From positions 124,001 to 188,000 of IMG/VR virus record IMGVR_UViG_3300042367_000228: a stretch of DNA of 64,000 bases, one strand, 5' to 3'. This document shows, in pieces, positions 1 to 45,603 of the stretch. Position 1 is the stretch's first letter, and each line of letters opens with the position of its first letter. A program made the translations under genes and the position numbers. The notes under the pieces are model-generated. The model was given only the letters and a program-made list of their open reading frames with translations, made no database searches and was not told where the DNA came from.

Positions 1-3000
1 TGGTTATTTAGCGAGCACTTAACACCGCCTGCACCGGTTAGTAATAATCGTACATTTGGAGCAGCAGTAGTAGCTACTCCAACTGGTGTTATTGTCGGTG
101 CTCCTGGGTCTGATAATCAACTAGGAGTGGTATATGAATTTGTAAAACCGATTGTATCGCAATACACTTGGAATATTAAGAATAAACATATAGCTAAACC
201 TGATATTACTAAAATTAAACAAGCATTTTTATATAATAAACGTACAAATAAGCTAGTAAAATATCTAGATATTGTCGATCCTATACAAGACAAGCATGTA
301 AATGTTGCCGAACGTGAAATTAAATATAAATTTTCTTATGATCCGGCAGTTTACACAACCGGTAATACGTTAGTAACTGTCGATGCAGGAGTTGCATGGA
401 CCACTGCGCAAGTCGGATCACTATGGTGGGACTTGCGTACTGCTAAATTTGTTGATAATTTTACCGATAATGTAATGTATAGAAATAGCATGTTAAGTAC
501 GTTAGCATACGGTGCATCAGTTGACATTTATGAATGGGTAGCAAGTAGATATAAACCGTCCGAGTGGGACAAAAGAGCCGACACTGATGCTGGATTGTCT
601 TTAAACATAAGTGGAAAATCGTTGTACGGCGATGATGTTTATTCGGAATTAAACCGATATGATACTATTAGCCAAACATTTTCGTCTATCTATTATTTTT
701 GGGTTAAAAATAAAGAAGTTGCATCTACTGGAAGAAGTATTTCAGCAGCAACAATTTCTAAATTAATTAGTAATCCAAAAGGCCAAGGATATGAATACTT
801 AGCATTAACTGGGTTAGATTCATTTAGTTTAGTTAATGTAAAATCGTTATTATCACATAATGATGTAGTGTTATCGGTTGAATATTGGACAGTTGATAAT
901 ATTAATCAAAATATTCATACTCAATGGAAACTTATTAGTAATGCATTAACTACGACCTTACCAGGTAGTGTGGAAGAAAAATGGTTTGATAGCTTGTGCG
1001 GTAAAGATATTAACAATCGAATAGTACCAGATCAGTTATTGCCTATGAAACTTCGATATGGTATAGAAAATAGACCTCGTCAAAGTATGTTTGTTAATAG
1101 ATTTGAAGCATTAAAGCAATTAATTGAACAAACAAATATTATTTTAAAATCAAATTTAATTACTGATACACGTAATCTAACAAATTTAAAGAAATACGAT
1201 ATTGCACCAAGTGAAGTAACTCGATTATACGATACTACTGTTGATACGTATGAGGAATTAAGATTTTCAATTACCAAATATTATTCGTTACCGATATTAA
1301 CTCCAATAATCGTTAATGGTAACATTTCGTCTGTTGTCATTAATGATGCAGGGCGAGGATATTTGATTGCTCCGACCGTTATCATTTACGGTAACGGGTC
1401 TAATGCATCTATAAAAACAGTTATTAATGAAATTGGCCAAATTGTTAGTATTATTATTGAAAATAGCGGTTTTGGTTATGATGACAATACTGTCTTAAGT
1501 GTTAGAACGTTTTCGACGTTAGTTTTAAGTGATTCAACATCTAATGGAAATTGGAGTATTTACTCTTATAACACTAGTAATAATTTATGGTTTAAGATAT
1601 TAACAGCATCTTATGATGTGAATAAATATTGGAATTATGTAGATTGGTATGAAACAGGATATAATCAATTTACTATTATTCAACATTCGGTTAATACTTA
1701 CGCTGATTTATACCAACTCGATGCATCGATTGGTGATAATGTAAAAATTCGAATTACTAATTCGGGTAGATGGGTTTTATTAAAAAAATATCAAGAATCA
1801 ACATCGATCGATTGGACAGAATCATACAAGGTAATCGGTAGTGAAAACGGAACAATACAATTTAGTTCGTTATTGTATAATTTTAAAGATACTGTAATAG
1901 GGTATGATGGTGCAATTTACGATTCGATAGTATACGATAATTATGCAGATGTAGAGTTACGAATTATTTTAAATGCTATTAAAACTGATTTATTAATAGG
2001 GATCGATTTAAAACCTAAATATCTAGATTTATTTTTTACAAGTGTCCGATATGCATTAAGTGAGCAAACGTATATTGATTGGATATTTAAGACTAGTTTT
2101 GTTAACGTAACACACAATGTTGGTAATTTACACCAATCTGCTACTTATAAAAATGATAATTTATCTAATTTTGAAGATTACGTATCAGAAGTAAAACCGT
2201 ATCGCACACAGGTTCGAGAATACACAAGTGTCTATGATGTTCTTGAAAATAGTAATTTTAGTGTTAGTGACTTTGATTTACCAGCTGCATACGATTCAAC
2301 AGCAAAAAAGATTGATGTTGTTGATGTTAATAGTCCATTAATTAATACGTATCCTTGGAAAAATTGGGTTGATAATGTAGGATATTCTGTAATTGATATA
2401 AAGATTATTAATGGTGGTTCAGAATACGTTACTGAACCGGTAGTAACAATAGTGTCGGACACAGGCGAAGGTGCAACTGCAAGAGCATTTATTGTTAATA
2501 ATCAAATTTCTAGAATTAAGTTATTAACTACCGGATTAAAGTACACAACGACACCGATTGTTAAAATTGAAGGTGGAAATAGAAGTACAGGAACTACTGC
2601 ACAAGCTATTGCAATTTTAGGTAATAGTTTAATAAGAACAAGTAACATTAAATTAAAATTTGATCGAATTTATCAAGATTATGTCATTGATGATTTGCAA
2701 CAAATAGATACAATTAACAGCAGTATAGTAACAGGAAATAAAGTGCAATTTGTTCTTACCTGGTTACCTGATGTAACAATTGGAAGAACTACAGTAACTA
2801 TTAACGGGTTGCCTGAATTAAGAAACAACTACACAATAGGATCAGTAACATCTATTGTTAATGGGCATACGGTTCACACAGGAGTTGTTACATTTAAGAC
2901 CGCACCGGCAAAAAGTAGTATAATTGTTGTGACCTATTATAAAAATATTGAAGTGTTAACTGCAACTGATAGAATACATTACTATTATAATCCAACTTCG

Positions 3001-4542
3001 GGAAATATAGGTAAAGATTTACCGCAGTTAATGTCGGGCATTGATTATGGCGGTGTAGTTGTAGGCGGTCTTAATTTTGATATAGTACATGGTTGGGATA
3101 GTATGCCGTATTATTCAGAACGATGGGATAATATTGATCCTGCTGACAACGATTACACAGTAGTAGTTGGGAGTTCGTTTTCGTATTCTATTGCATTACC
3201 GTATGTTCCGGAAATCGGAACACGGTTTAACGTGTATTATAAAAAAGTAGATACTACTGATACGGTTAGAGTTGATGCATCTGATTATAGTTTTGGGGTA
3301 GTAAACACTAATGTTGATGTAGTAATGTTAACTCCAGTAACAACGGGTGAATCTAACATTATTGAGTTACCTGGATCACTTAACGTGTCAGCTGGTGATA
3401 CTATTATTATTCGCAAAGAAACTAGCGACGGATCAGTTGTTAATGATTATGATACGTTATTATCGGGTGGTAATTTTGCAATGGGATCAGCAGCAGGGAT
3501 AACACCGGAAGATATAGTCGTCGACGGTGATGAATTTTATTCAACTGTTAACGGATACGGACCTGAAGAAGTTGTACCTGGTCAAGTAGTTGATACTCTT
3601 GCTATCAAGGTTTACACTAAATTAGAAACCGGTGCATTTATGCAGTTTAAAGACATGTTAAATACGGTAAAATATACTAGATTAGAAAGAGATAAAAAAA
3701 CTAAATTAGCTAAAGATTTACTACAAGGAGATACTACTATTACGTTAGTTGATTCAACTAATTTTGAGAATCCAAATCAACTAGTAAACAGACCGGGAGT
3801 TATTGACATTAATGGCGAAAGAATTGAATTTTTTACAAATGAAAACAATACTTTAGGTGGGTTACGTAGGGGAACAATGGGAACAGGTGTTGCGAGTATT
3901 CATAAAGCTAATTCAGTAGTTCAGGAAATTGGATCAGCTGAATCTATTTCATATACCGATACAGTAAAAATTGATCAATTTACAATAACTGATGCTAATA
4001 TTACAATATTATCGGACGGAACAGCGGCAACAGTAATCGAATTATCATATATTCCTAAAAAATCATCTGCTAGTTGGGTAATTGATTCGGTATATGGCCA
4101 AACTGATGAAATTGAAGTGTTTGTTGGTGGTTATAAATCGGATGAAATGTGGGAATCAAATGTTAGTTATTTGGTAAATGATATTGTTAATGTAGGTGTG
4201 TATGCATATCGATGTATAGTTGCGCATACTAGTAGTGTTAATTTTAAAAATGATCGCAATAAATGGATTTATTTTATAGGAAATATACGATTGAAAAAAG
4301 CACCATATACTGTTCATAATATAAATTTAAGTACATTAAGTTCGACAGGCGATATTCAATTTAATGCTGATTTTGCTGTTACAGGAGCATCAAGACGAGT
4401 ATTAATAACTTGCCCAATAACTCCTGGAACATTAGTTAGTGTTATTAGAAAAACCGGAGTATATTGGCAAACAGGGTCTGAAGAAATAACTGCGTTCATA
4501 AATGCAGTGCCATCTGCAGAATACGAACCGCCAACTATTTAA
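1..4542 (+). CDS. Large baseplate wedge / virion structural protein, 5'-truncated by the window edge
   Basis: Frame is open from base 1 (WLFSEHL...FGAAVVAT..GVIVGAPG, FG-GAP-like), so the ORF-track start at 127 is internal. Contains repeated 'G.GY...P.V.I' beta modules typical of T4-like baseplate proteins and heads the structural operon. Confidence 0.7.
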   Translation, partial: WLFSEHLTPPAPVSNNRTFGAAVVATPTGVIVGAPGSDNQLGVVYEFVKPIVSQYTWNIKNKHIAKPDITKIKQAFLYNKRTNKLVKYLDIVDPIQDKHVNVAEREIKYKFSYDPAVYTTGNTLVTVDAGVAWTTAQVGSLWWDLRTAKFVDNFTDNVMYRNSMLSTLAYGASVDIYEWVASRYKPSEWDKRADTDAGLSLNISGKSLYGDDVYSELNRYDTISQTFSSIYYFWVKNKEVASTGRSISAATISKLISNPKGQGYEYLALTGLDSFSLVNVKSLLSHNDVVLSVEYWTVDNINQNIHTQWKLISNALTTTLPGSVEEKWFDSLCGKDINNRIVPDQLLPMKLRYGIENRPRQSMFVNRFEALKQLIEQTNIILKSNLITDTRNLTNLKKYDIAPSEVTRLYDTTVDTYEELRFSITKYYSLPILTPIIVNGNISSVVINDAGRGYLIAPTVIIYGNGSNASIKTVINEIGQIVSIIIENSGFGYDDNTVLSVRTFSTLVLSDSTSNGNWSIYSYNTSNNLWFKILTASYDVNKYWNYVDWYETGYNQFTIIQHSVNTYADLYQLDASIGDNVKIRITNSGRWVLLKKYQESTSIDWTESYKVIGSENGTIQFSSLLYNFKDTVIGYDGAIYDSIVYDNYADVELRIILNAIKTDLLIGIDLKPKYLDLFFTSVRYALSEQTYIDWIFKTSFVNVTHNVGNLHQSATYKNDNLSNFEDYVSEVKPYRTQVREYTSVYDVLENSNFSVSDFDLPAAYDSTAKKIDVVDVNSPLINTYPWKNWVDNVGYSVIDIKIINGGSEYVTEPVVTIVSDTGEGATARAFIVNNQISRIKLLTTGLKYTTTPIVKIEGGNRSTGTTAQAIAILGNSLIRTSNIKLKFDRIYQDYVIDDLQQIDTINSSIVTGNKVQFVLTWLPDVTIGRTTVTINGLPELRNNYTIGSVTSIVNGHTVHTGVVTFKTAPAKSSIIVVTYYKNIEVLTATDRIHYYYNPTSGNIGKDLPQLMSGIDYGGVVVGGLNFDIVHGWDSMPYYSERWDNIDPADNDYTVVVGSSFSYSIALPYVPEIGTRFNVYYKKVDTTDTVRVDASDYSFGVVNTNVDVVMLTPVTTGESNIIELPGSLNVSAGDTIIIRKETSDGSVVNDYDTLLSGGNFAMGSAAGITPEDIVVDGDEFYSTVNGYGPEEVVPGQVVDTLAIKVYTKLETGAFMQFKDMLNTVKYTRLERDKKTKLAKDLLQGDTTITLVDSTNFENPNQLVNRPGVIDINGERIEFFTNENNTLGGLRRGTMGTGVASIHKANSVVQEIGSAESISYTDTVKIDQFTITDANITILSDGTAATVIELSYIPKKSSASWVIDSVYGQTDEIEVFVGGYKSDEMWESNVSYLVNDIVNVGVYAYRCIVAHTSSVNFKNDRNKWIYFIGNIRLKKAPYTVHNINLSTLSSTGDIQFNADFAVTGASRRVLITCPITPGTLVSVIRKTGVYWQTGSEEITAFINAVPSAEYEPPTI

Positions 4543-39724: not shown

Positions 39725-42385
39725 TTAATCAAAATCAAATAAATTGTTAAATGTGTTTTTGTCAGATGTGTTAACTAGTTTCCAGTTAAGAATTCCGATT
39801 AAGTTATCTAACTTGTTATCAATAATTGTTTGTTCCATTTCATTATGATCAAACGGTAAGTCTTTAAACCATTGCGGTAATCGTAGTTCGTCTACTGGAT
39901 ATGCAACACTTGTAAACCCCAACGGATTTGGTTTAAGTTTACATACAATTACTTTTGCACCGTCTGTAATAGACATCGAATATTTGTCACTGTACATACG
40001 TTTTAAAGTATTCCAGTTTATACTTGCTCTTACATGCCCGGGCATATTAGTTTTACCTTGTTTATCTTCTTTTGTAGCATATGAAGTAATACTGTTAGCA
40101 CGTTTAGGTGAACCTTTTTCCCACCCAGGTCTAGCTTTAAATAGTAACCTAAATTCTGTAATGTAATCTAATACAGTATCTTCACTTTCGCCTGCTAGAA
40201 CCATTTGTAACACTTGTGATAAAAAATCTTGAATAAATTCCGGTGTATCACTACGTTTTAAATCTAATCCCATAGCTTTAATTTCACCATTTTTACCATT
40301 AGTGTCTTTACGTTTACCTTCTTTATCGTATACTAATACTGCATAACGCTTTTTAGTAATAAACAACGATTTACTTCCGACGATCTCACGTCCGGCTTTA
40401 ATAACTTCGCCACGCGATTTAGGACAATGGAATGCATCTAACATAAACTGCTGGAATGTGCTATTAACTTGATCACTAATTTGATCATATAACTGAACAA
40501 TAGTATCTTTAGACCATGGTAAACTACCATTATCGATATCACGTTTGAGTGTATTGTATGCACTAAAGTAACAGGAGTCAGTATCACCGTAAATAATAGC
40601 TTTACCTGTGTGATTATAATCACCGGTAATGATTTCATTTACTTTTGCAGCCATATGTTTAGCAATTTGGCGACCTACTAGCGTAGTAGATTGTCCAATG
40701 CGCTTATCAAAGAACCTACAACCTGGATTAAGAATAGCACCGTATAAACTATTTAGGTTAATCTTCTTAACTAACTGTCTTTTATCCCAGTATTCTTCTT
40801 CAATTTTATTACCTGCGTTAATAGCTTCTTTTAGTTTTTTCTGCATATCTTTACGTTCTGCATACCATCGTTTAAGTAAACCAGGAATAACTCCTTCTAC
40901 TTCAACGGAAAAGATAGTACCATTAGCAGATAACACCCATGGTTGATTGCTTTCAAACACTAACCTGTATACTTCGGCAGCACTTAGTACATCTGTATCA
41001 CCATTTTCCCAGTCAACTACTATATCAGTACCTATTTCTTCATTCATAACAGCAGTATATTCAAGAGTACCAAATAATCCTTCCCATGCAGCGGCAAATG
41101 ATTTACCTTTTGCTAGTTGCATAGAAATAAATTCATCAGTTGCAACAGGTCTTAACTGACCTACAATAGTCTCCGGACCCATATTTAATGCTCTAATAGC
41201 ACTAGGATACAGAGAGTTGATATCTAGTGATCCGACCCAGTCATGAATTCCTTCTTTTGGATATGCAACATACGCACCTGCAGCTTGAATAGGATCTTCT
41301 CTACGTCTATTAGGTACAACAAATCCTCTGTTATGTGCTTCGTTAATAATAGCTTGTTCTGTTACAGCAACAGCACCCATAGTAGTTTGTAGTAATACTG
41401 TATTTTCATGTGCAAGTGTGTTAGCTAAGTCAATAAATTTTAGTTTTTTGTCTAAACTATCTAATAGCATGGTATCTTGTCTATTATATTCAATAAATGT
41501 TTTAAAGTCATTGTTATATAATTGATCAAGGGTGCCTTCGTATTGTGTTTTACGGTCGCCTAGTTCATATTCTGCAATAGCATCGAGTCTAAAACTATGT
41601 CTTTCTTCATATGTGTACTTTTGATATAGCTGTAAGCTATCTAAATGTACACGTCCTACAAAGTCATATGTTACTGATGCTTTACCGTATTTTTCATATT
41701 CACGTCTTTTTGGTAATTGATCGAATAAGCAGAACCTACGTGTATCATCTTTTGATAATACTTTAGTAACACGATTAACTGTATATGGTATATCAAATCC
41801 TTCACTATTCCAACCACTTAAAATGTCAGCATCTTCTATTAAATTAAGAAATGTGTCTAATAATTCAGCTTCAGTTTTAAATAAAAACGTATTAGGAAAC
41901 TCTTTTACTTGTTCTTCTGCTTGCTCCATAGTTAATGTCTTTGGAGGAATAGCTAAACAGATAAGTGTTTCTAACCATTGTAAGTGTACAGCAATCGCAG
42001 TAATGGGCATAAACGCATCATCGGGCGATGCATAACCACGTTCTGGATCAAAGTCGACCTCGATATCAAAAAACGCAACGTTTAGTTTAGGCGCGTCGTG
42101 GTTAAGATAGTGTTCTGATAAACATGCAAATATTGGATTAATATCTGCTTCAAATGTTTTACTTGTGCTATGTATAGAAAGTTCTTTTCTATACTCTTTT
42201 GTATTTCTACAAACAATTTTTGATACGGGGTCTCTGTAGATTGATTGATATTTCCCTTTCGAGTCTTTATAATATAATGTGTGCTTTACGGGAATGTCTT
42301 TAAACTCCCGTTCGCCTTTTGAGTTTCTTTCTACAATCTTAATAACATCGTTATTGCGATCAAAGTATCCATCTATATAACTCAT
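39725..42385 (-). CDS. Family B DNA polymerase (gp43-like)
   Basis: Exonuclease motifs FDIEV, GWNSEGFD, YNRQD; polymerase motifs DINSLYPS, KINLNSLYG, YGDTDS, KKRYA. Uninterrupted. Confidence 0.95.
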   Translation of the reverse strand: MSYIDGYFDRNNDVIKIVERNSKGEREFKDIPVKHTLYYKDSKGKYQSIYRDPVSKIVCRNTKEYRKELSIHSTSKTFEADINPIFACLSEHYLNHDAPKLNVAFFDIEVDFDPERGYASPDDAFMPITAIAVHLQWLETLICLAIPPKTLTMEQAEEQVKEFPNTFLFKTEAELLDTFLNLIEDADILSGWNSEGFDIPYTVNRVTKVLSKDDTRRFCLFDQLPKRREYEKYGKASVTYDFVGRVHLDSLQLYQKYTYEERHSFRLDAIAEYELGDRKTQYEGTLDQLYNNDFKTFIEYNRQDTMLLDSLDKKLKFIDLANTLAHENTVLLQTTMGAVAVTEQAIINEAHNRGFVVPNRRREDPIQAAGAYVAYPKEGIHDWVGSLDINSLYPSAIRALNMGPETIVGQLRPVATDEFISMQLAKGKSFAAAWEGLFGTLEYTAVMNEEIGTDIVVDWENGDTDVLSAAEVYRLVFESNQPWVLSANGTIFSVEVEGVIPGLLKRWYAERKDMQKKLKEAINAGNKIEEEYWDKRQLVKKINLNSLYGAILNPGCRFFDKRIGQSTTLVGRQIAKHMAAKVNEIITGDYNHTGKAIIYGDTDSCYFSAYNTLKRDIDNGSLPWSKDTIVQLYDQISDQVNSTFQQFMLDAFHCPKSRGEVIKAGREIVGSKSLFITKKRYAVLVYDKEGKRKDTNGKNGEIKAMGLDLKRSDTPEFIQDFLSQVLQMVLAGESEDTVLDYITEFRLLFKARPGWEKGSPKRANSITSYATKEDKQGKTNMPGHVRASINWNTLKRMYSDKYSMSITDGAKVIVCKLKPNPLGFTSVAYPVDELRLPQWFKDLPFDHNEMEQTIIDNKLDNLIGILNWKLVNTSDKNTFNNLFDFD

Positions 42386-42567
42386 CCTGCACTACCTTCA
42401 CGACCAATGTCGCGATTAGTTGCATGATCGTTAATCCATGACATAAATGCTTCTTCGTTACGTACTTTTGCAACAGCTTCATGACTGTGTACAATAATAC
42501 TGCATTCGCATCTTGATAAGCATATCTCCGGACGAATACATTCCGTACAGATTTTAAATTCTTCCAT
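42382..42567 (-). CDS. Small Cys-rich protein coupled to the polymerase gene
   Basis: MEEFKICTECIRPEICLSRCEC; its stop overlaps the pol start (ATGA). Confidence 0.5.
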   Translation of the reverse strand: MEEFKICTECIRPEICLSRCECSIIVHSHEAVAKVRNEEAFMSWINDHATNRDIGREGSAG

Positions 42568-42653
42568 ATTGTATCTCAGTTTATGTGACTTGTGGCTCAC
42601 AAATACCCTTTTGCAGTTTATGGCCTGCCTACCGTTCTCAATGTTACTACTTT

Positions 42654-42908
42654 TTAAATACGTTTTGTAATGTCTAAGATTGCTTCAACTTCTTCCCAAT
42701 CTTCATTATGATCTGCCCAATTACCTTTATGTGCTATCTTAATAGCTTTATTAATAACTGCAGGTTTGACTTGTAGTTCTTCTGCTACTGCTTTTACAGT
42801 ATCTTTTAAACCAGCTTGTAAGTCTTCAACTTCACGTAAAACTAAAGAACCTTCGTTGATTAGTTTTTCAAGTTTAGCTTTTTCTTCTGGACCGTATGCT
42901 CTACTCAT
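42654..42908 (-). CDS. DsbA-like dsDNA-binding protein
   Basis: 84-aa helical protein with LKDTVKAVAEEL.VKPAVINKAIKIAHK; GGAG RBS; upstream of pol. Confidence 0.6.
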   Translation of the reverse strand: MSRAYGPEEKAKLEKLINEGSLVLREVEDLQAGLKDTVKAVAEELQVKPAVINKAIKIAHKGNWADHNEDWEEVEAILDITKRI

Positions 42909-42940
42909 TAGTACTTCTCCTTTGTTTAATTTATGTATAT

Positions 42941-42969
42941 ATTATATATTCGTTTGTTCAGTGTGTCAA
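42941..42969 (-). promoter_or_regulatory. Consensus sigma70 promoter
   Basis: TTGACA-17-TATAAT upstream of dsbA and pol. Confidence 0.8.
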
Positions 42970-42990
42970 CTGGCTTGGTAAAATGAAGGT

Positions 42991-43018
42991 AAAAAAAGGC
43001 AGACTAGCTGCCTTTTTT
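42991..43018. terminator. Intrinsic terminator
   Basis: A7-GGCAG-actag-CTGCC-T6 just after the 43030 stop. Confidence 0.8.
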
Positions 43019-43029
43019 AATTGTAACGA

Positions 43030-45603
43030 TTATTGTACGCCGTTTAATCTTGTAGACATATCAGCTACTGCTTTCTGTGCTTCAGGATTTGAACTTTTAC
43101 CTACATCTGCCATTAATGTTCTAAGTTGAGCCATTAATGCTGCCATTTCTGCATCAGAAGGATCTGCTGCCGGAGTTACAGGTGGAGTTGGAGGTGTTGG
43201 AGGAGTTACTGGAGTAGTACCGCCGCCATCGTGATGTGGTTTATGAATATGTGGTTCAGGATTATGTATTGGATCTGGTTTAGGACCTTGTCCACTATGA
43301 TATGCGTCCCATGCAGCCATACCGCCTGCACCTGCTGCTGCGCCACCTAAGAAGCTAGCAGTTTTTGGGTTTTTGTTAACAATATCGCCTGCACCGTGTG
43401 CAATTTTATCTGCTCTAGTCAATGCTGTCGGACCTGCAGAACTTGCTCTAGACAAAGCTGGCTCACCTTTAGCACCACGTACTAAGTTTTTACCTGCGTT
43501 CCAAGCACCTTTTCCAATTTTTGCTAATGCATCACCAATGCCTTCGTTAGCTAATTCGTCCATAAATGCAGGATCTAATCCACTTTCAATTAATGATAAT
43601 CTTGCACCTAATGCTCTAATAGATTCAGCTACAGGTTGCGGAGCTGCATTAGTACCTGGGAATTTAGGATCTGGTTGGAATTTAGGGAACACTCTGTCAT
43701 ATGCCGCTTGTGTTGCTGGACCGTAAATACCGTCGACTTTAAGATGTTCACCGTTAGCATTTAACAATTCTTGCCATTTCATAATTTCAGGATTACCTTG
43801 TTTATGTACTGGACCGTGCGGATGTGGTTTAGGATGTGGTTTTGGTCCAGGTGGTGGCATTGGGCCTTGTCCGTTATCACCTGCTAATGCACTATACCCA
43901 GCCATGCCTGCAGCTAATCCTGCAATAGCAGCATTTCTTTTACCACCTTTCTCTGCAGCTTTTTCACCTTTGCCTGCAAAATTATAGTTTTTACTTTTGC
44001 CAAGTGCATTTACGTCCATACCGCCTTGTGCGTAAGTTGCATCATTAGCTGCGCCTCTTGCACCATATGATGCGTCATTTGCTGCTGTTCTTTCTAATCC
44101 GCCTGCTGCGGCACCTGCGTCATTAGCTGCTGCTTTTCCTGCATCTGCTGCAGCATTGCTGCCCCATGCTGGGCCTGCAGCTGGTTTACCTAAATGACTT
44201 ACATCACCGGCACCTTGTGAAGTTGCACCTTTAAGTGCGCCCCAACCCATAGACGCGTCATTAGCTGCTGCTTTTCCTAACGCGCTTGCATCATTAGCTG
44301 CTACTTTGCTAAGTATTTTGCTACCTACTGTACCCCAGTCTTCGGCTACTTGTGGATTGTTAATACGTTCCAATGTATCACGCATAGCTGCAATTGATTC
44401 AGCTACTGTTAATTGTTTCATTTCTGTACCTTCTTTAATGCCAAATTTTGCTTGTGCTGCTTTAGTTTTAGGCCCCATAATTCCGTCAACGCCGTCGTGG
44501 TTAGGACCGCTTGTACCTAAGTCAGCACCTTTAGCTTTTAATTGTTGTTGCAATGCCATGATATGATTAGTACCAGCATTACCTGCAGGATGCGGACCTA
44601 CTGGAGTTTGTTGGGTACCTAAAGTATGTGCATTAGCTGCATCGACTGCTTGTCCTGCAATATATCGTTTACCTACTACACCTGCAGCACCTGCAAGACC
44701 TTTAGCTGCACCGCCCGGAGTTACAAAACTTCCAGCTAAGTCACCACCACCGTATAACCATGGACTTCTTTCTTCGGCTGCTTTATTAGCAGCAAGTTCC
44801 CCTGCTAGTTCGTCTTTATATTTGGTTCCTTTAACTAAACTTTTAACCCCGGCATTAATATTGCTACCAGTACCCCATGTAACACCGTTCCATACACCGC
44901 GTCCAAGGTCTCCTGCGTCGCTTGCAAGATCTTCATTTAACTGTTCATAACCGAAGCTGTCAAGTAATGCATTAGCCATACCGTATGATTCTTTAAGTCC
45001 AGCAGGTGCATTTGCTAGTCCAGCACTTGCATCTTTCATACTAGTTTGAATGTTGTTTAGTGTATTAGCAATATTTGGAGGAGTAATAGCATTGGCAGCT
45101 GCTGCATTTGCACCAGGTGATCCTAAGCTATTAGCTGCTAAGTTTTTATCAGCGCGTTTTTTACGTAATTCTAAAATTTTATTAAACAAGTCCATCATTT
45201 GTTTAATTTTATCATGTAACGCATCTGCATCACCTGAAATTTGAGAACTTTGACTAACTAAGTCCGCGTTTGCTTTTTTAAAGGTGTCTTCGTTGTCAAA
45301 CCAACCTGCCTGCGGCAATCTAGCGTTTTTAGGCAATAGACCAGCTGCTGATAATTTTTGCGCAATTTCAAATGGTACTTCATCGTCTACTTCGCCTTCG
45401 TTTGAAATATAATTTCCATTTACTGGATCAACTAATCCTTCTAAACCGTTTTCTTTAGCTAATTGTGCTAATTTTGGTATTCTTACCTTATCATCTTGTT
45501 CATACCCTGATGTTACTGCAATGATTGCAGATAGTGTTAACCCTTCAGCCAACATTCCATTATTAATGTTGTCTAGTTTATTCATTAAATCTCTAAAATT
45601 CAT
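43030..45603 (-). CDS. Ala/Gly-rich modular protein with two peptidoglycan-binding domains (putative internal/ejected virion protein)
   Basis: LQQQL...GVDGIMGPKTKAA and WQELL...VDGIYGPATQAA (PG_binding_1-like); AANDA repeats; Pro/His linkers. Confidence 0.65.
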   Translation of the reverse strand: MNFRDLMNKLDNINNGMLAEGLTLSAIIAVTSGYEQDDKVRIPKLAQLAKENGLEGLVDPVNGNYISNEGEVDDEVPFEIAQKLSAAGLLPKNARLPQAGWFDNEDTFKKANADLVSQSSQISGDADALHDKIKQMMDLFNKILELRKKRADKNLAANSLGSPGANAAAANAITPPNIANTLNNIQTSMKDASAGLANAPAGLKESYGMANALLDSFGYEQLNEDLASDAGDLGRGVWNGVTWGTGSNINAGVKSLVKGTKYKDELAGELAANKAAEERSPWLYGGGDLAGSFVTPGGAAKGLAGAAGVVGKRYIAGQAVDAANAHTLGTQQTPVGPHPAGNAGTNHIMALQQQLKAKGADLGTSGPNHDGVDGIMGPKTKAAQAKFGIKEGTEMKQLTVAESIAAMRDTLERINNPQVAEDWGTVGSKILSKVAANDASALGKAAANDASMGWGALKGATSQGAGDVSHLGKPAAGPAWGSNAAADAGKAAANDAGAAAGGLERTAANDASYGARGAANDATYAQGGMDVNALGKSKNYNFAGKGEKAAEKGGKRNAAIAGLAAGMAGYSALAGDNGQGPMPPPGPKPHPKPHPHGPVHKQGNPEIMKWQELLNANGEHLKVDGIYGPATQAAYDRVFPKFQPDPKFPGTNAAPQPVAESIRALGARLSLIESGLDPAFMDELANEGIGDALAKIGKGAWNAGKNLVRGAKGEPALSRASSAGPTALTRADKIAHGAGDIVNKNPKTASFLGGAAAGAGGMAAWDAYHSGQGPKPDPIHNPEPHIHKPHHDGGGTTPVTPPTPPTPPVTPAADPSDAEMAALMAQLRTLMADVGKSSNPEAQKAVADMSTRLNGVQ

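What the first reader, a model, noticed from the sequence alone, without database searches (positions are those of the whole stretch)
42584..42628. Tandem hairpins with matching 8-nt loops upstream of the polymerase: candidate translational operator
The mRNA sense reads GCAG-GCCAUAAA-CUGC ... UGUGA-GCCACAAG-UCACA, just 5' of the RBS. T4 gp43 represses its own translation through a 5-bp stem/8-nt loop hairpin beside its RBS. Here there are two hairpins with a shared GCCAYAAR loop.
Basis: partly seen in the sequence, partly recalled or inferred. Interest (0 to 1): 0.6.

Follow-up and report, generated by a model that had tools for sequence, protein, structure and literature searches.

The report
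Conserved pseudoknotted hairpins leading phage polymerase mRNA
The two small hairpins are real: they are one copy of a previously undescribed, strongly conserved RNA structure (two mini-pseudoknots pressed against the ribosome-binding site) that heads the DNA polymerase message in a large clade of uncultivated jumbo phages, and it most likely acts as a translational on/off switch like the classic T4 polymerase operator.

Summary
Observation confirmed. Interpretation partly supported.

- **What is there:** both hairpins are at 42628-42613 and 42601-42584 on the minus strand. Alone they are no better than chance (fold z 0.47; loop motif at chance frequency).
- **Conservation:** about 130 relatives (polymerase 72-88% identical, plus a second sub-clade) carry the same element. 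Stems differ in sequence but keep pairing: 92.7% of cells paired against 18-39% in slid controls, and 176 double changes against 52 in shuffles.
- **Loops:** GCC-A-Y-A-A-N and GCC-N-N-A-A-R.
- **New finding:** a GGY trimer 2-3 nt upstream of each hairpin pairs with the loop GCC. This helix is 100% paired, with G-C to A-U double changes in three stem contexts, so each unit is a mini H-type pseudoknot.
- **Position:** hairpin 2 normally ends 1-3 nt before the polymerase GGAG.
- **The window's copy:** a 61-aa Cys-rich ORF lies between the element and pol, and its TGA overlaps the pol ATG.
- **Specificity:** one copy per genome, always at the pol leader. No Rfam match, and no RegA or RegB gene.
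- **Mechanism:** most likely a gene-specific translational operator, probably autogenous as in T4, RB69 and RB49, but with a different structure and sequence. Polymerase binding is untested.

The parts
42572..42641 (-). Whole leader element as matched by covariance model R1 (two pseudoknotted hairpin units plus the RBS region)
   Evidence: 67.1 bits, E 1.9e-19. It is the only strong hit in the window and in the whole 372-kb genome.
42631..42633 (-). GGU trimer 1, the 5' strand of the pseudoknot helix that pairs with GCC of loop 1
   Evidence: Read. GGY:GCC pairing holds in 109 of 110 instances and in none at slid registers. The formal count is 100% paired, with G-C x53 and A-U x4.
42613..42628 (-). 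Hairpin 1: stem GCAG/CUGC, loop GCCAUAAA
   Evidence: Read. All four stem pairs show changes on both sides across relatives. At least 15 different stem sequences occur.
42605..42607 (-). GGU trimer 2, within the conserved GGUAUU linker, complementary to GCC of loop 2
   Evidence: Read. GGU or GGC precedes hairpin 2 in essentially all instances. No variation in loop 2 GCC was seen, so this helix is inferred by analogy with unit 1.
42584..42601 (-). Hairpin 2: stem UGUGA/UCACA, loop GCCACAAG
   Evidence: Read. Helix 2 is 98.6% paired, and 4 of 5 pairs show double changes.
42575..42577 (-). Weak Shine-Dalgarno (GAG) of the 61-aa ORF. Relatives have GGAG 1-3 nt after hairpin 2.
   Evidence: Read.
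42382..42567 (-). 61-aa Cys-rich ORF (P0001) inserted between the element and pol. Its TGA overlaps the pol ATG.
   Evidence: Homologs sit at the same position in L001, L103 and L058, with four invariant Cys. No Pfam or PHROG family matches.
39725..42385 (-). Family B DNA polymerase (gp43 homolog), 886 aa
   Evidence: PF00136 at 9.2e-36 and PF03104 at 1.6e-18. It is 49.7% identical to the Sinorhizobium phage Phosso polymerase and about 27% to T4's.
42654..42908 (-). DsbA-like small DNA-binding protein gene, directly upstream of the element
   Evidence: PF11126 at 1.5e-05 and phrog_639 transcriptional regulator.
42941..42969 (-). Perfect sigma-70 consensus promoter (TTGACA-17-TATAAT) upstream of the dsbA-like gene. 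It may drive a dsbA-element-ORF-pol transcript.
   Evidence: 12 of 12 match, and no terminator-like site in 42300-43100. This is a consensus match only.

Best explanation
The element is a structured RNA in the 5' leader of the polymerase operon. It consists of two tandem units, and some lineages have only one. Each unit is a 4-5 bp hairpin with an 8-nt loop. The first three loop bases (GCC) pair with a GGY trimer 2-3 nt upstream, giving a compact H-type pseudoknot. The A-rich rest of the loop is positioned to lie along the short helix.

The second unit ends 1-3 nt before the Shine-Dalgarno sequence, about 10-14 nt before the start codon, which is inside the 30S footprint. The most likely function is a gene-specific translational operator. 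A repressor binds the folded units and blocks ribosome loading on the first cistron. By analogy with T4, RB69 and RB49 gp43, that repressor is most probably the polymerase itself when it is not engaged on DNA.

In this window the first cistron is a 61-aa ORF. Its stop overlaps the pol start, so repression would pass to pol through translational coupling.

Shown: the structure, its conservation, its position, and its uniqueness to this leader. Inferred: that it represses translation, and the identity of the binder.
For: Structure:
- Two hairpins are 92.7% paired against 18.5-38.6% in slid controls. There are 176 double-change cells against 51.8 in shuffles (0 of 500 shuffles reach the observed value).
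- RNAalifold finds the same two hairpins independently.
- The pseudoknot helix is 100% paired. G-C changes to A-U in L116/L075, L166 and L303/L305/L307, which are three stem contexts whose sister sequences keep GGU/GCC.
- G.U wobbles (about 15 cells in A1; 29 in hairpin 2 stems) against 2 A.C cells place the fold on the sense strand.

Position:
- The GGAG core lies 1-3 nt after hairpin 2 in 93 of 110 instances, and the start codon lies 10-14 nt after it in 94 of 110.
- In 22 instances the stem extends to 7 bp and takes in the AAG of AAGGAG.

Specificity:
- There is one strong hit per genome, always at the pol leader, in G000 and in five relatives of 119-238 kb.
- The downstream gene is pol in nearly all of 114 instances.

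Coupling:
- Every same-strand gene inserted between the element and pol ends in a TGA that overlaps the pol ATG: three variants of the small Cys-rich ORF and a 203-aa ORF.
- The element stays next to pol when the upstream gene differs.

Precedent:
- T4 and RB69 operators are single hairpins with 4-5 bp stems and 8-nt loops beside the SD. The RB49 hairpin overlaps its SD (review PMC3014915).
- No RegA or RegB gene is present to offer a general repressor.
Against: - There are no binding or expression data.
- The loop sequences differ from those of T4/RB69 (AAUAACUC), and model R1 finds nothing in the T4, RB69 or RB49 leaders.
- The conserved loop bases (GCC, AA) could be explained entirely by the RNA's own tertiary fold, so a sequence-specific protein is not required by the data.
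- The review notes that some T4-related polymerases do not autoregulate.
- Sister lineages (L322, L323, L330) and more distant relatives (Phosso, Atu_ph07, RaK2, Vibrio 2.275.O) lack the element.
- In L015 the element persists although an opposite-strand gene separates it from pol.
- Two units would be unusual for a monomeric polymerase.
- In the window, a consensus promoter upstream of dsbA suggests the element may be internal to a longer transcript.
Confidence: 0.48

Rival explanations
1. The element acts without a protein. The folded pseudoknots at or near the mRNA 5' end protect the polymerase message from 5'-end-dependent decay, or they set a fixed, modest translation rate or act as a ribosome standby site.
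For: - A -10-like box (TATAAT, TAAATA, and TATAAATA in L046) lies 5-14 nt upstream of the first GGY in most relatives, so the element may form the extreme 5' end of the transcript.
- All conserved loop bases can be explained by RNA-RNA contacts.
- The hairpins are weak on their own (z about -0.4 to -1.4, and +0.9 for L324), so the tertiary fold would matter.
Against: - A generic stabiliser or enhancer would be expected at other genes, but the element occurs once per genome.
- Its spacing is fixed relative to the SD, not relative to the upstream gene or promoter.
- In the window, no promoter was detected between the dsbA-like gene and the element.
Confidence: 0.2
2. It is a translational operator, but the repressor is another protein and not the polymerase. 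Candidates include the phage SSB, another replication protein, a host protein, or in some lineages the small Cys-rich protein encoded directly after it.
For: - Two similar units suggest a dimeric or bivalent binder.
- The L20 operator is a precedent for two sites, one of them a pseudoknot (PMC1888825 abstract).
- A four-Cys small protein is encoded immediately downstream in the window, L001, L103 and L058.
Against: - The small ORF is absent at this position in most relatives and was not found in five large relative contigs.
- A general regulator should have several targets, but only one site exists per genome.
- No RegA is present.
Confidence: 0.15
3. It is a small tandem riboswitch. Each roughly 25-nt pseudoknot binds a metabolite, such as a nucleotide or deoxynucleotide, and ligand-dependent folding next to the SD tunes polymerase synthesis.
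For: - The element is made of compact H-type pseudoknots with invariant loop bases directly beside the SD.
- Both tandem and single-unit versions exist.
- It has one gene-specific site per genome.
- From my own knowledge, not tested here: preQ1-I and guanidine-II/III are similarly small, and guanidine-II consists of two like hairpins.
Against: - No Rfam family matches, even at permissive thresholds, in the window or in canonical relatives.
- The unit would be smaller than any known aptamer.
- There is no obvious ligand pocket, because after the pairings little conserved unpaired sequence is left.
- Loop 2 positions 4-5 are free to vary.
Confidence: 0.1
4. It acts at the DNA level (promoter, protein-binding inverted repeats, origin-related hairpins), or it is a terminator of the upstream gene, or it is a chance pair of hairpins.
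For: - The single-sequence statistics are at chance level.
- AT-rich promoter-like boxes lie nearby.
Against: - The stems change sequence freely while keeping pairing, which is not how DNA-binding sites behave.
- G.U wobbles are tolerated only on the sense strand.
- No U-run follows either hairpin, and the scan found no terminator.
- The pseudoknot covariation makes sense only for a single strand.
- Chance is excluded by the 67-80 bit hits across relatives.
Confidence: 0.03

Closest known systems
Translational operator of DNA polymerase gp43 in phages T4, RB69 and RB49 (autogenous repression)
   Same: - It lies in the 5' leader of the homologous family B polymerase gene.
- The hairpin has a 4-5 bp stem and an 8-nt loop (T4 AGCCU/GGGCU, RB69 AGAC/GUCU).
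- The 3' half of the loop is A-rich.
- The hairpin sits within a few nt of the SD, or overlaps it as in RB49.
- There is one site per genome.
- All of this was read directly. Function is as reviewed in PMC3014915.
   Different: - There are usually two units instead of one.
- The loops are GCCAYAAN and GCCNNAAR, not AAUAACUC or GUAAAU.
- Loop GCC pairs with an upstream GGY to make a pseudoknot, whereas the review says there is no evidence for one in gene 43.
- Model R1 finds no similarity in the T4, RB69 or RB49 leaders.
- The polymerases are only about 27% identical.
- Binding has not been shown here.
T4/T2/RB69 gene 32 operator (5' pseudoknot nucleating autogenous repression by the SSB)
   Same: It is an H-type pseudoknot in the leader of a replication gene, used for gene-specific autogenous translational control (PMC3014915; PMC535899).
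   Different: - That pseudoknot is larger and lies far upstream of the RBS, followed by an unstructured A/U-rich tract that the SSB coats.
- Here the pseudoknots are tiny (3 + 4-5 bp), duplicated, and abut the SD.
- The gene is the polymerase, not the SSB.
E. coli ribosomal protein L20 operator (rpmI-rplT)
   Same: Two binding sites lie in one leader, one of them a pseudoknot, and they serve one autogenous translational repressor (abstract of PMC1888825).
   Different: - It is an unrelated gene and protein.
- Its two sites differ in structure, whereas here the two units are alike.
- There is no sequence similarity.
Small pseudoknot or tandem-hairpin riboswitches (preQ1-I, guanidine-II/III); comparison from my own knowledge, not tested beyond Rfam
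   Same: They have compact H-type pseudoknots or paired like hairpins with invariant loop bases, placed directly beside the SD to control translation.
   Different: No Rfam model matches, no ligand is known, the loop-to-upstream pairing orientation differs from preQ1-I, and the units are smaller.

Membership tests
T4-type gp43 translational operator | Lies in the 5' leader of the phage family B DNA polymerase mRNA, next to or overlapping its RBS | tested here: met
   Hairpin 2 ends 1-3 nt before GGAG of pol in 93 of 110 relatives. In the window the adjacent RBS is that of a 61-aa ORF whose stop overlaps the pol ATG.
T4-type gp43 translational operator | A single hairpin with a 4-5 bp stem and an 8-nt loop (T4 18 nt, RB69 16 nt) | tested here: inconclusive
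   Each unit has this geometry. However, there are usually two units, and each forms an extra pseudoknot helix. Single-unit forms exist in L324 and L326-329.
T4-type gp43 translational operator | Loop sequence with -UAAC- (T4, RB69) or -UAAA- (RB49), with the 3' AC/AA loop bases important | tested here: not met
   The loops are GCCAYAAN and GCCNNAAR. Only the AA, and UAAA in loop 1, recall RB49. R1 gives no hit at the T4, RB69 or RB49 leaders.
T4-type gp43 translational operator | Bound specifically by the cognate polymerase, with repression of its own translation | not testable with these tools
   This needs EMSA, toeprinting or reporter assays.
H-type RNA pseudoknot | Hairpin loop bases pair with a segment outside the hairpin, supported by covariation | tested here: met
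   The GGY:GCC helix is 100% paired. Pair 3-15 is G-C x53 and A-U x4. Pair 5-13 is U.G x47, C-G x9 and U-A x1. No pairing is seen at slid registers. The A-U changes occur in three stem contexts and at separate places on the pol tree. Shown for unit 1 only; unit 2 is inferred.
Any described RNA family (Rfam 15) | Match to a curated covariance model | tested here: not met
   There is no relevant hit at E up to 10 in window 42300-42800, or at E up to 1 in five canonical relatives.
RegA-type translational operator | Unstructured A/U-rich site at the AUG, bound by a phage RegA protein that has many targets | tested here: not met
   No PF01818 match in the complete 372-kb genome. The element is structured and occurs once per genome.
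Intrinsic terminator / attenuator | GC-rich hairpin followed by a U-run | tested here: not met
   No terminator-like site in 42300-43100, and neither hairpin is followed by a U-run.

The most novel reading that the evidence does not exclude
Each roughly 25-nt unit is a ligand-binding aptamer, making this a tandem mini-pseudoknot riboswitch, smaller than any known class. It would couple translation of a phage DNA polymerase to a small molecule such as a deoxynucleotide or nucleotide precursor.
Probability: 0.1. Interest if true: 0.9.

Novelty: new variant of a known kind. Interest (0 to 1): 0.63.

Why it matters
Autogenous translational control of DNA polymerase is a textbook case, and the T4 gp43 operator was the target of the first SELEX experiment. 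Yet it is known only from a few close T4 relatives, and some T4-like polymerases lack it.

This work finds a structurally different leader element, backed by strong covariation, at the same gene. It occurs in at least about 130 contigs of a large clade of uncultivated jumbo phages whose polymerase is only about 27% identical to T4's.

If the polymerase binds it, control of PolB synthesis through its own mRNA leader would be either old or repeatedly reinvented, with a new RNA solution (tandem mini-pseudoknots) to study. If it does not, the element is a new cis-regulatory RNA class, possibly ligand-sensing.

In either case it is a well-defined candidate for Rfam, and it comes with natural compensatory mutants and with natural single-unit, double-unit and lost variants.

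Tried and rejected
- **Single-sequence statistics:** fold energy and motif counts do not distinguish the hairpins from chance. The CAUAAACUG direct repeat I noticed is not conserved in relatives.
- **DNA similarity:** a distant-mode search of named phages with the locus found nothing. tblastn with the 61-aa ORF found nothing.
- **Rfam:** no match.
- **Distant named relatives:** Phosso, Atu_ph07, RaK2, Vibrio 2.275.O, T4, RB69 and RB49 show no R1 hit at their pol leaders.
- **RegA and RegB as binders or processors:** neither gene is present in the genome.
- **Terminator reading:** rejected.
- **Element belonging to the 3' end of dsbA:** rejected, because in other sub-clades a 96-97-aa membrane-protein gene lies between dsbA and the element.
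- **Extra R1 hit in G002 (17.2 bits):** looks like coding sequence, so dismissed.
- **Petrov and Karam 2002 (PMC137073):** not held.
- a greedy regex missed the 8-nt loops and was fixed. An unbiased hairpin finder picked up the pseudoknot helix itself, AUGG/CCAU. The looser pattern scan brought in about 56 chance matches, which were filtered out by requiring the hairpin 2 stem.
- **T4-like late promoter:** TATAAATA is depleted in the window (4 against 14 expected) and was not pursued.

Full report
**What is in the window.**
The window is bases 124001-188000 of a 372-kb phage record with direct terminal repeats. On the minus strand the gene order is as follows:
- a DsbA-like small DNA-binding protein gene (42908-42654; PF11126; phrog_639)
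- an 86-nt spacer
- a 61-aa ORF (42567-42382)
- an 886-aa family B DNA polymerase (42385-39725; PF00136 and PF03104)

The spacer reads GGU-AG-GCAG-GCCAUAAA-CUGC, then AAAAG-GGU-AUU-UGUGA-GCCACAAG-UCACA, then UAAACUGAGAUACAAU-AUG.

The RBS and AUG that follow belong to the 61-aa ORF, not to the polymerase. The polymerase AUG overlaps that ORF's TGA.

The nearest named phages are Sinorhizobium phage Phosso (49.7% polymerase identity), Agrobacterium phage Atu_ph07 and the RaK2-like jumbo phages. T4 is about 27% identical.

**Is it more than chance?**
Judged on this sequence alone, it is not:
- The fold is no better than shuffles (z 0.47; z -0.36 for the 71-nt core).
- The loop motif occurs at chance frequency (8 found against 8.2 expected).
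- GCC..AA-loop hairpins are not enriched in the genome (6 found against about 12 expected).

The case rests entirely on comparison with relatives.

**Comparative evidence for the two hairpins.**
A polymerase-anchored search of IMG/VR gave 80 loci with polymerases 72-88% identical. All 80 carry the element:
- 77 have it directly in front of pol.
- 2 have a small ORF in between.
- 1 (L015) has an opposite-strand gene in between.

I aligned 71 non-redundant leaders (A1). For the two-hairpin structure:
- 92.7% of cells are paired, against 18.5-38.6% when partners are slid.
- 176 cells have changes on both sides, against 51.8 in shuffles (0 of 500 shuffles reach the observed value).
- 9 of 10 pairs show compensatory changes.
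- RNAalifold predicts the same two hairpins on its own.

Two pattern scans, each anchored on one hairpin so that the other was unbiased, raised the set to 110 distinct instances. These have at least 15 different stem-1 sequences and at least 12 different stem-2 sequences.

G.U wobbles are common in the sense orientation (about 15 cells in A1; 29 in hairpin 2 stems), while A.C cells are rare (2). So the fold belongs to the mRNA strand.

The loops are G-C-C-A-Y-A-A-N in unit 1 and G-C-C-N-N-A-A-R in unit 2. The unbiased alignment A1 gives the same invariant positions.

**A third helix: each unit is a pseudoknot.**
A conserved GGY trimer lies 2-3 nt upstream of each stem. Before unit 1 it appears as RGGU, and before unit 2 as part of the GGUAUU linker. 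It is complementary to the loop's GCC.

For unit 1:
- 109 of 110 instances can form all three pairs, and none can at registers slid by 1-3 nt.
- Every sequence whose loop begins GCU has AGU upstream: L116 and L075 (identical unit), L166, and L303, L305 and L307.
- Every GCC loop has GGU or GGC upstream.
- These changes occur in three different stem contexts (GAUCA, AAUCA, GUCG), and each context has sister sequences that keep GGU/GCC.
- On a quick polymerase tree the first three fall in separate places. L075 is sister to a GCC-bearing locus (L076) with 100% support.

In a gap-free alignment of 57 units (A5) the helix is 100% paired:
- pair 3-15: G-C x53 and A-U x4
- pair 4-14: invariant G-C
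- pair 5-13: U.G x47, C-G x9 and U-A x1

One sequence (L195, loop UCC) has a mismatch.

The order is GGY, spacer, 5' stem, GCC, five A-rich loop bases, 3' stem. This is the topology of an H-type pseudoknot with no nucleotide between the helices and an A-rich third loop. By the usual stereochemical rules for such pseudoknots this geometry is feasible, which is an inference.

For unit 2 neither GGY nor GCC varies informatively, so its pseudoknot is inferred by analogy with unit 1.

**Position and specificity.**
- The GGAG core starts 1-3 nt after hairpin 2 in 93 of 110 instances.
- The start codon lies 10-14 nt after hairpin 2 in 94 of 110.
- GGAG is the SD in 103 of 110.
- In 22 instances the stem extends to 7 bp and takes in the AAG of AAGGAG.
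- The window's copy is at the loose end of this range, with a weak GAG and 16 nt to the AUG.
- A covariance model (R1) finds one strong hit in the complete 372-kb genome (67.1 bits; next best 13.6).
- It also finds one strong hit, always at the pol leader, in each of five relative contigs of 119-238 kb.
- The element stays next to pol when the upstream gene changes. Where the dsbA-like gene is not adjacent, a 96-97-aa membrane-protein gene lies between it and the element.

**Natural variants.**
- **Inserted small ORFs.** A homologous small Cys-rich ORF of 46-61 aa, with four invariant Cys, sits between the element and pol in three forms: the window/L001/L290 type, L103 and L058. Each ends in a TGA that overlaps the pol ATG.
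- **Second sub-clade.** This was reached through the L117 polymerase. In it, 36 of 54 loci have the full element flush with pol.
- **Single-unit forms.** Seven loci (L324, L326-329, L337, L338) have a single unit before pol.
- **Single unit with an inserted ORF.** Four loci (L318-321) have a single unit followed by an inserted 203-aa ORF. The ORF gives a weak, sub-threshold 2OG-Fe(II) oxygenase match, and its TGA again overlaps the pol ATG.
- **Loci without the element.** Six lack it: L322, L323 and L330, whose polymerases start MPYVD, and the 49-58% identical L342, L343 and L346. Phosso, Atu_ph07, RaK2 and Vibrio phage 2.275.O also lack it.

So the element is clade-specific. It can work as one unit or two. 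Same-strand insertions behind it are always translationally coupled to pol.

**Comparison with known systems.**
I read the experimentally studied operators directly:
- T4 has AGCCU-AAUAACUC-GGGCU, followed by AUAAACUAAGGA and the AUG.
- RB69 has AGAC-AAUAACUC-GUCU, followed by AAAGGA.
- RB49 has CUUUC-GUAAAU-GAAGG, overlapping its SD and sitting just after a TATAAT box.

The review PMC3014915 states that gp43 binds a hairpin plus the RBS-overlapping sequence. It also says the loop UAAC or UAAA and its 3' AC or AA matter, that there is no evidence for a pseudoknot in gene 43, and that some T4-related polymerases do not autoregulate.

The present element shares the gene, the position, the stem and loop sizes, and an A-rich loop 3' half. 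It differs in loop sequence, in having two units, and in the pseudoknot. R1 does not recognise the T4, RB69 or RB49 leaders.

It is therefore an analogue, not a member, of the T4 operator family. Rfam 15 has no model for it, and my literature searches found no description of it.

**Mechanism.**
The best-supported reading is a gene-specific translational operator. A folded pseudoknot unit sits at about -11 to -15 relative to the start codon. A bound repressor would block 30S loading on the first cistron, and through ATGA coupling it would also block pol where another ORF has been inserted.

The single site per genome, the absence of RegA and RegB, and the precedent in T4 relatives all point to the polymerase itself as the repressor. 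Nothing here tests binding.

The rivals are these:
- a protein-independent stabiliser or standby element, favoured by the -10-like boxes 5-14 nt upstream of the first GGY
- another protein as the repressor
- a very small tandem riboswitch

DNA-level, terminator and chance explanations are effectively excluded by covariation, strand-specific wobbles and the lack of a U-run.

**Limits.**
- The loop statistics come from instances selected with some loop positions fixed. The pol-anchored alignment A1 is the unbiased check.
- The tree is the quick version of the analysis, and recombination of leaders cannot be excluded. L075 and L116 share an identical unit.
- Promoter statements rest on consensus matches only.
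- No expression data could be obtained.

Noticed in passing
window 42382-42567 (-); also L001:2831-3004, L103:4836-5009 (-), L058:1858-1998: A family of small (46-61 aa) proteins with four invariant Cys (roughly C-x2-C-x5-C-x3-C-x-C). It is inserted between the leader element and pol in scattered lineages, and its TGA always overlaps the pol ATG. No Pfam or PHROG family matches, and the Atlas gives only viral hypothetical clusters. It was not found elsewhere in five large relative contigs.
   Followed up: partly
L015:204-947 (-): A 247-aa opposite-strand ORF is inserted between an intact leader element (117-188, 70.5 bits) and pol, which there has its own AAGGAG. It carries CxxC pairs, and its C-terminus looks endonuclease-like by eye. 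It may be a mobile endonuclease gene; no family scan was run on it.
   Followed up: no
L318:893-1504 (also L319-L321): A 203-aa ORF with a weak, sub-threshold match to a putative 2OG-Fe(II) oxygenase (PF13759, 25.4 bits against a cut-off of 27). It is inserted between a single-unit element and pol, and its stop overlaps the pol ATG.
   Followed up: partly
L125, about 3300-3390 on the minus-strand reading: Unit 1 is replaced by a terminator-like hairpin (9-bp stem followed by a run of seven U) that runs directly into GGUAUU and unit 2. This leaves no room for a promoter between the terminator and the operator.
   Followed up: no
window 42941-42969 (-): A perfect sigma-70 consensus promoter (TTGACA, 17 nt, TATAAT; 12 of 12) lies upstream of the dsbA-like gene. 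This suggests host-polymerase early transcription of a dsbA-to-pol unit.
   Followed up: no
window 43030-45603 (-): An 857-aa low-complexity protein rich in Ala, Gly, Lys and Pro, with weak peptidoglycan-binding domain hits (PF01471, PF09374), lies upstream of the dsbA-like gene. Lys-rich counterparts sit at the same position in relatives (L053, L067).
   Followed up: no
whole window: The T4 late-promoter octamer TATAAATA is depleted: 4 copies against 14.25 expected, and all 100 shuffles had at least 4.
   Followed up: no
L089 (Atu_ph07, MF403008.1) 1201-4170: In the deposited record the polymerase of Agrobacterium phage Atu_ph07 is annotated as two adjacent CDS (1201-2898 and 2917-4170).
   Followed up: no
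L053:2499-2792, L067:2637-2927: A conserved 96-97-aa predicted membrane protein gene lies between the dsbA-like gene and the leader element in many relatives. It is absent from the window's lineage.
   Followed up: no
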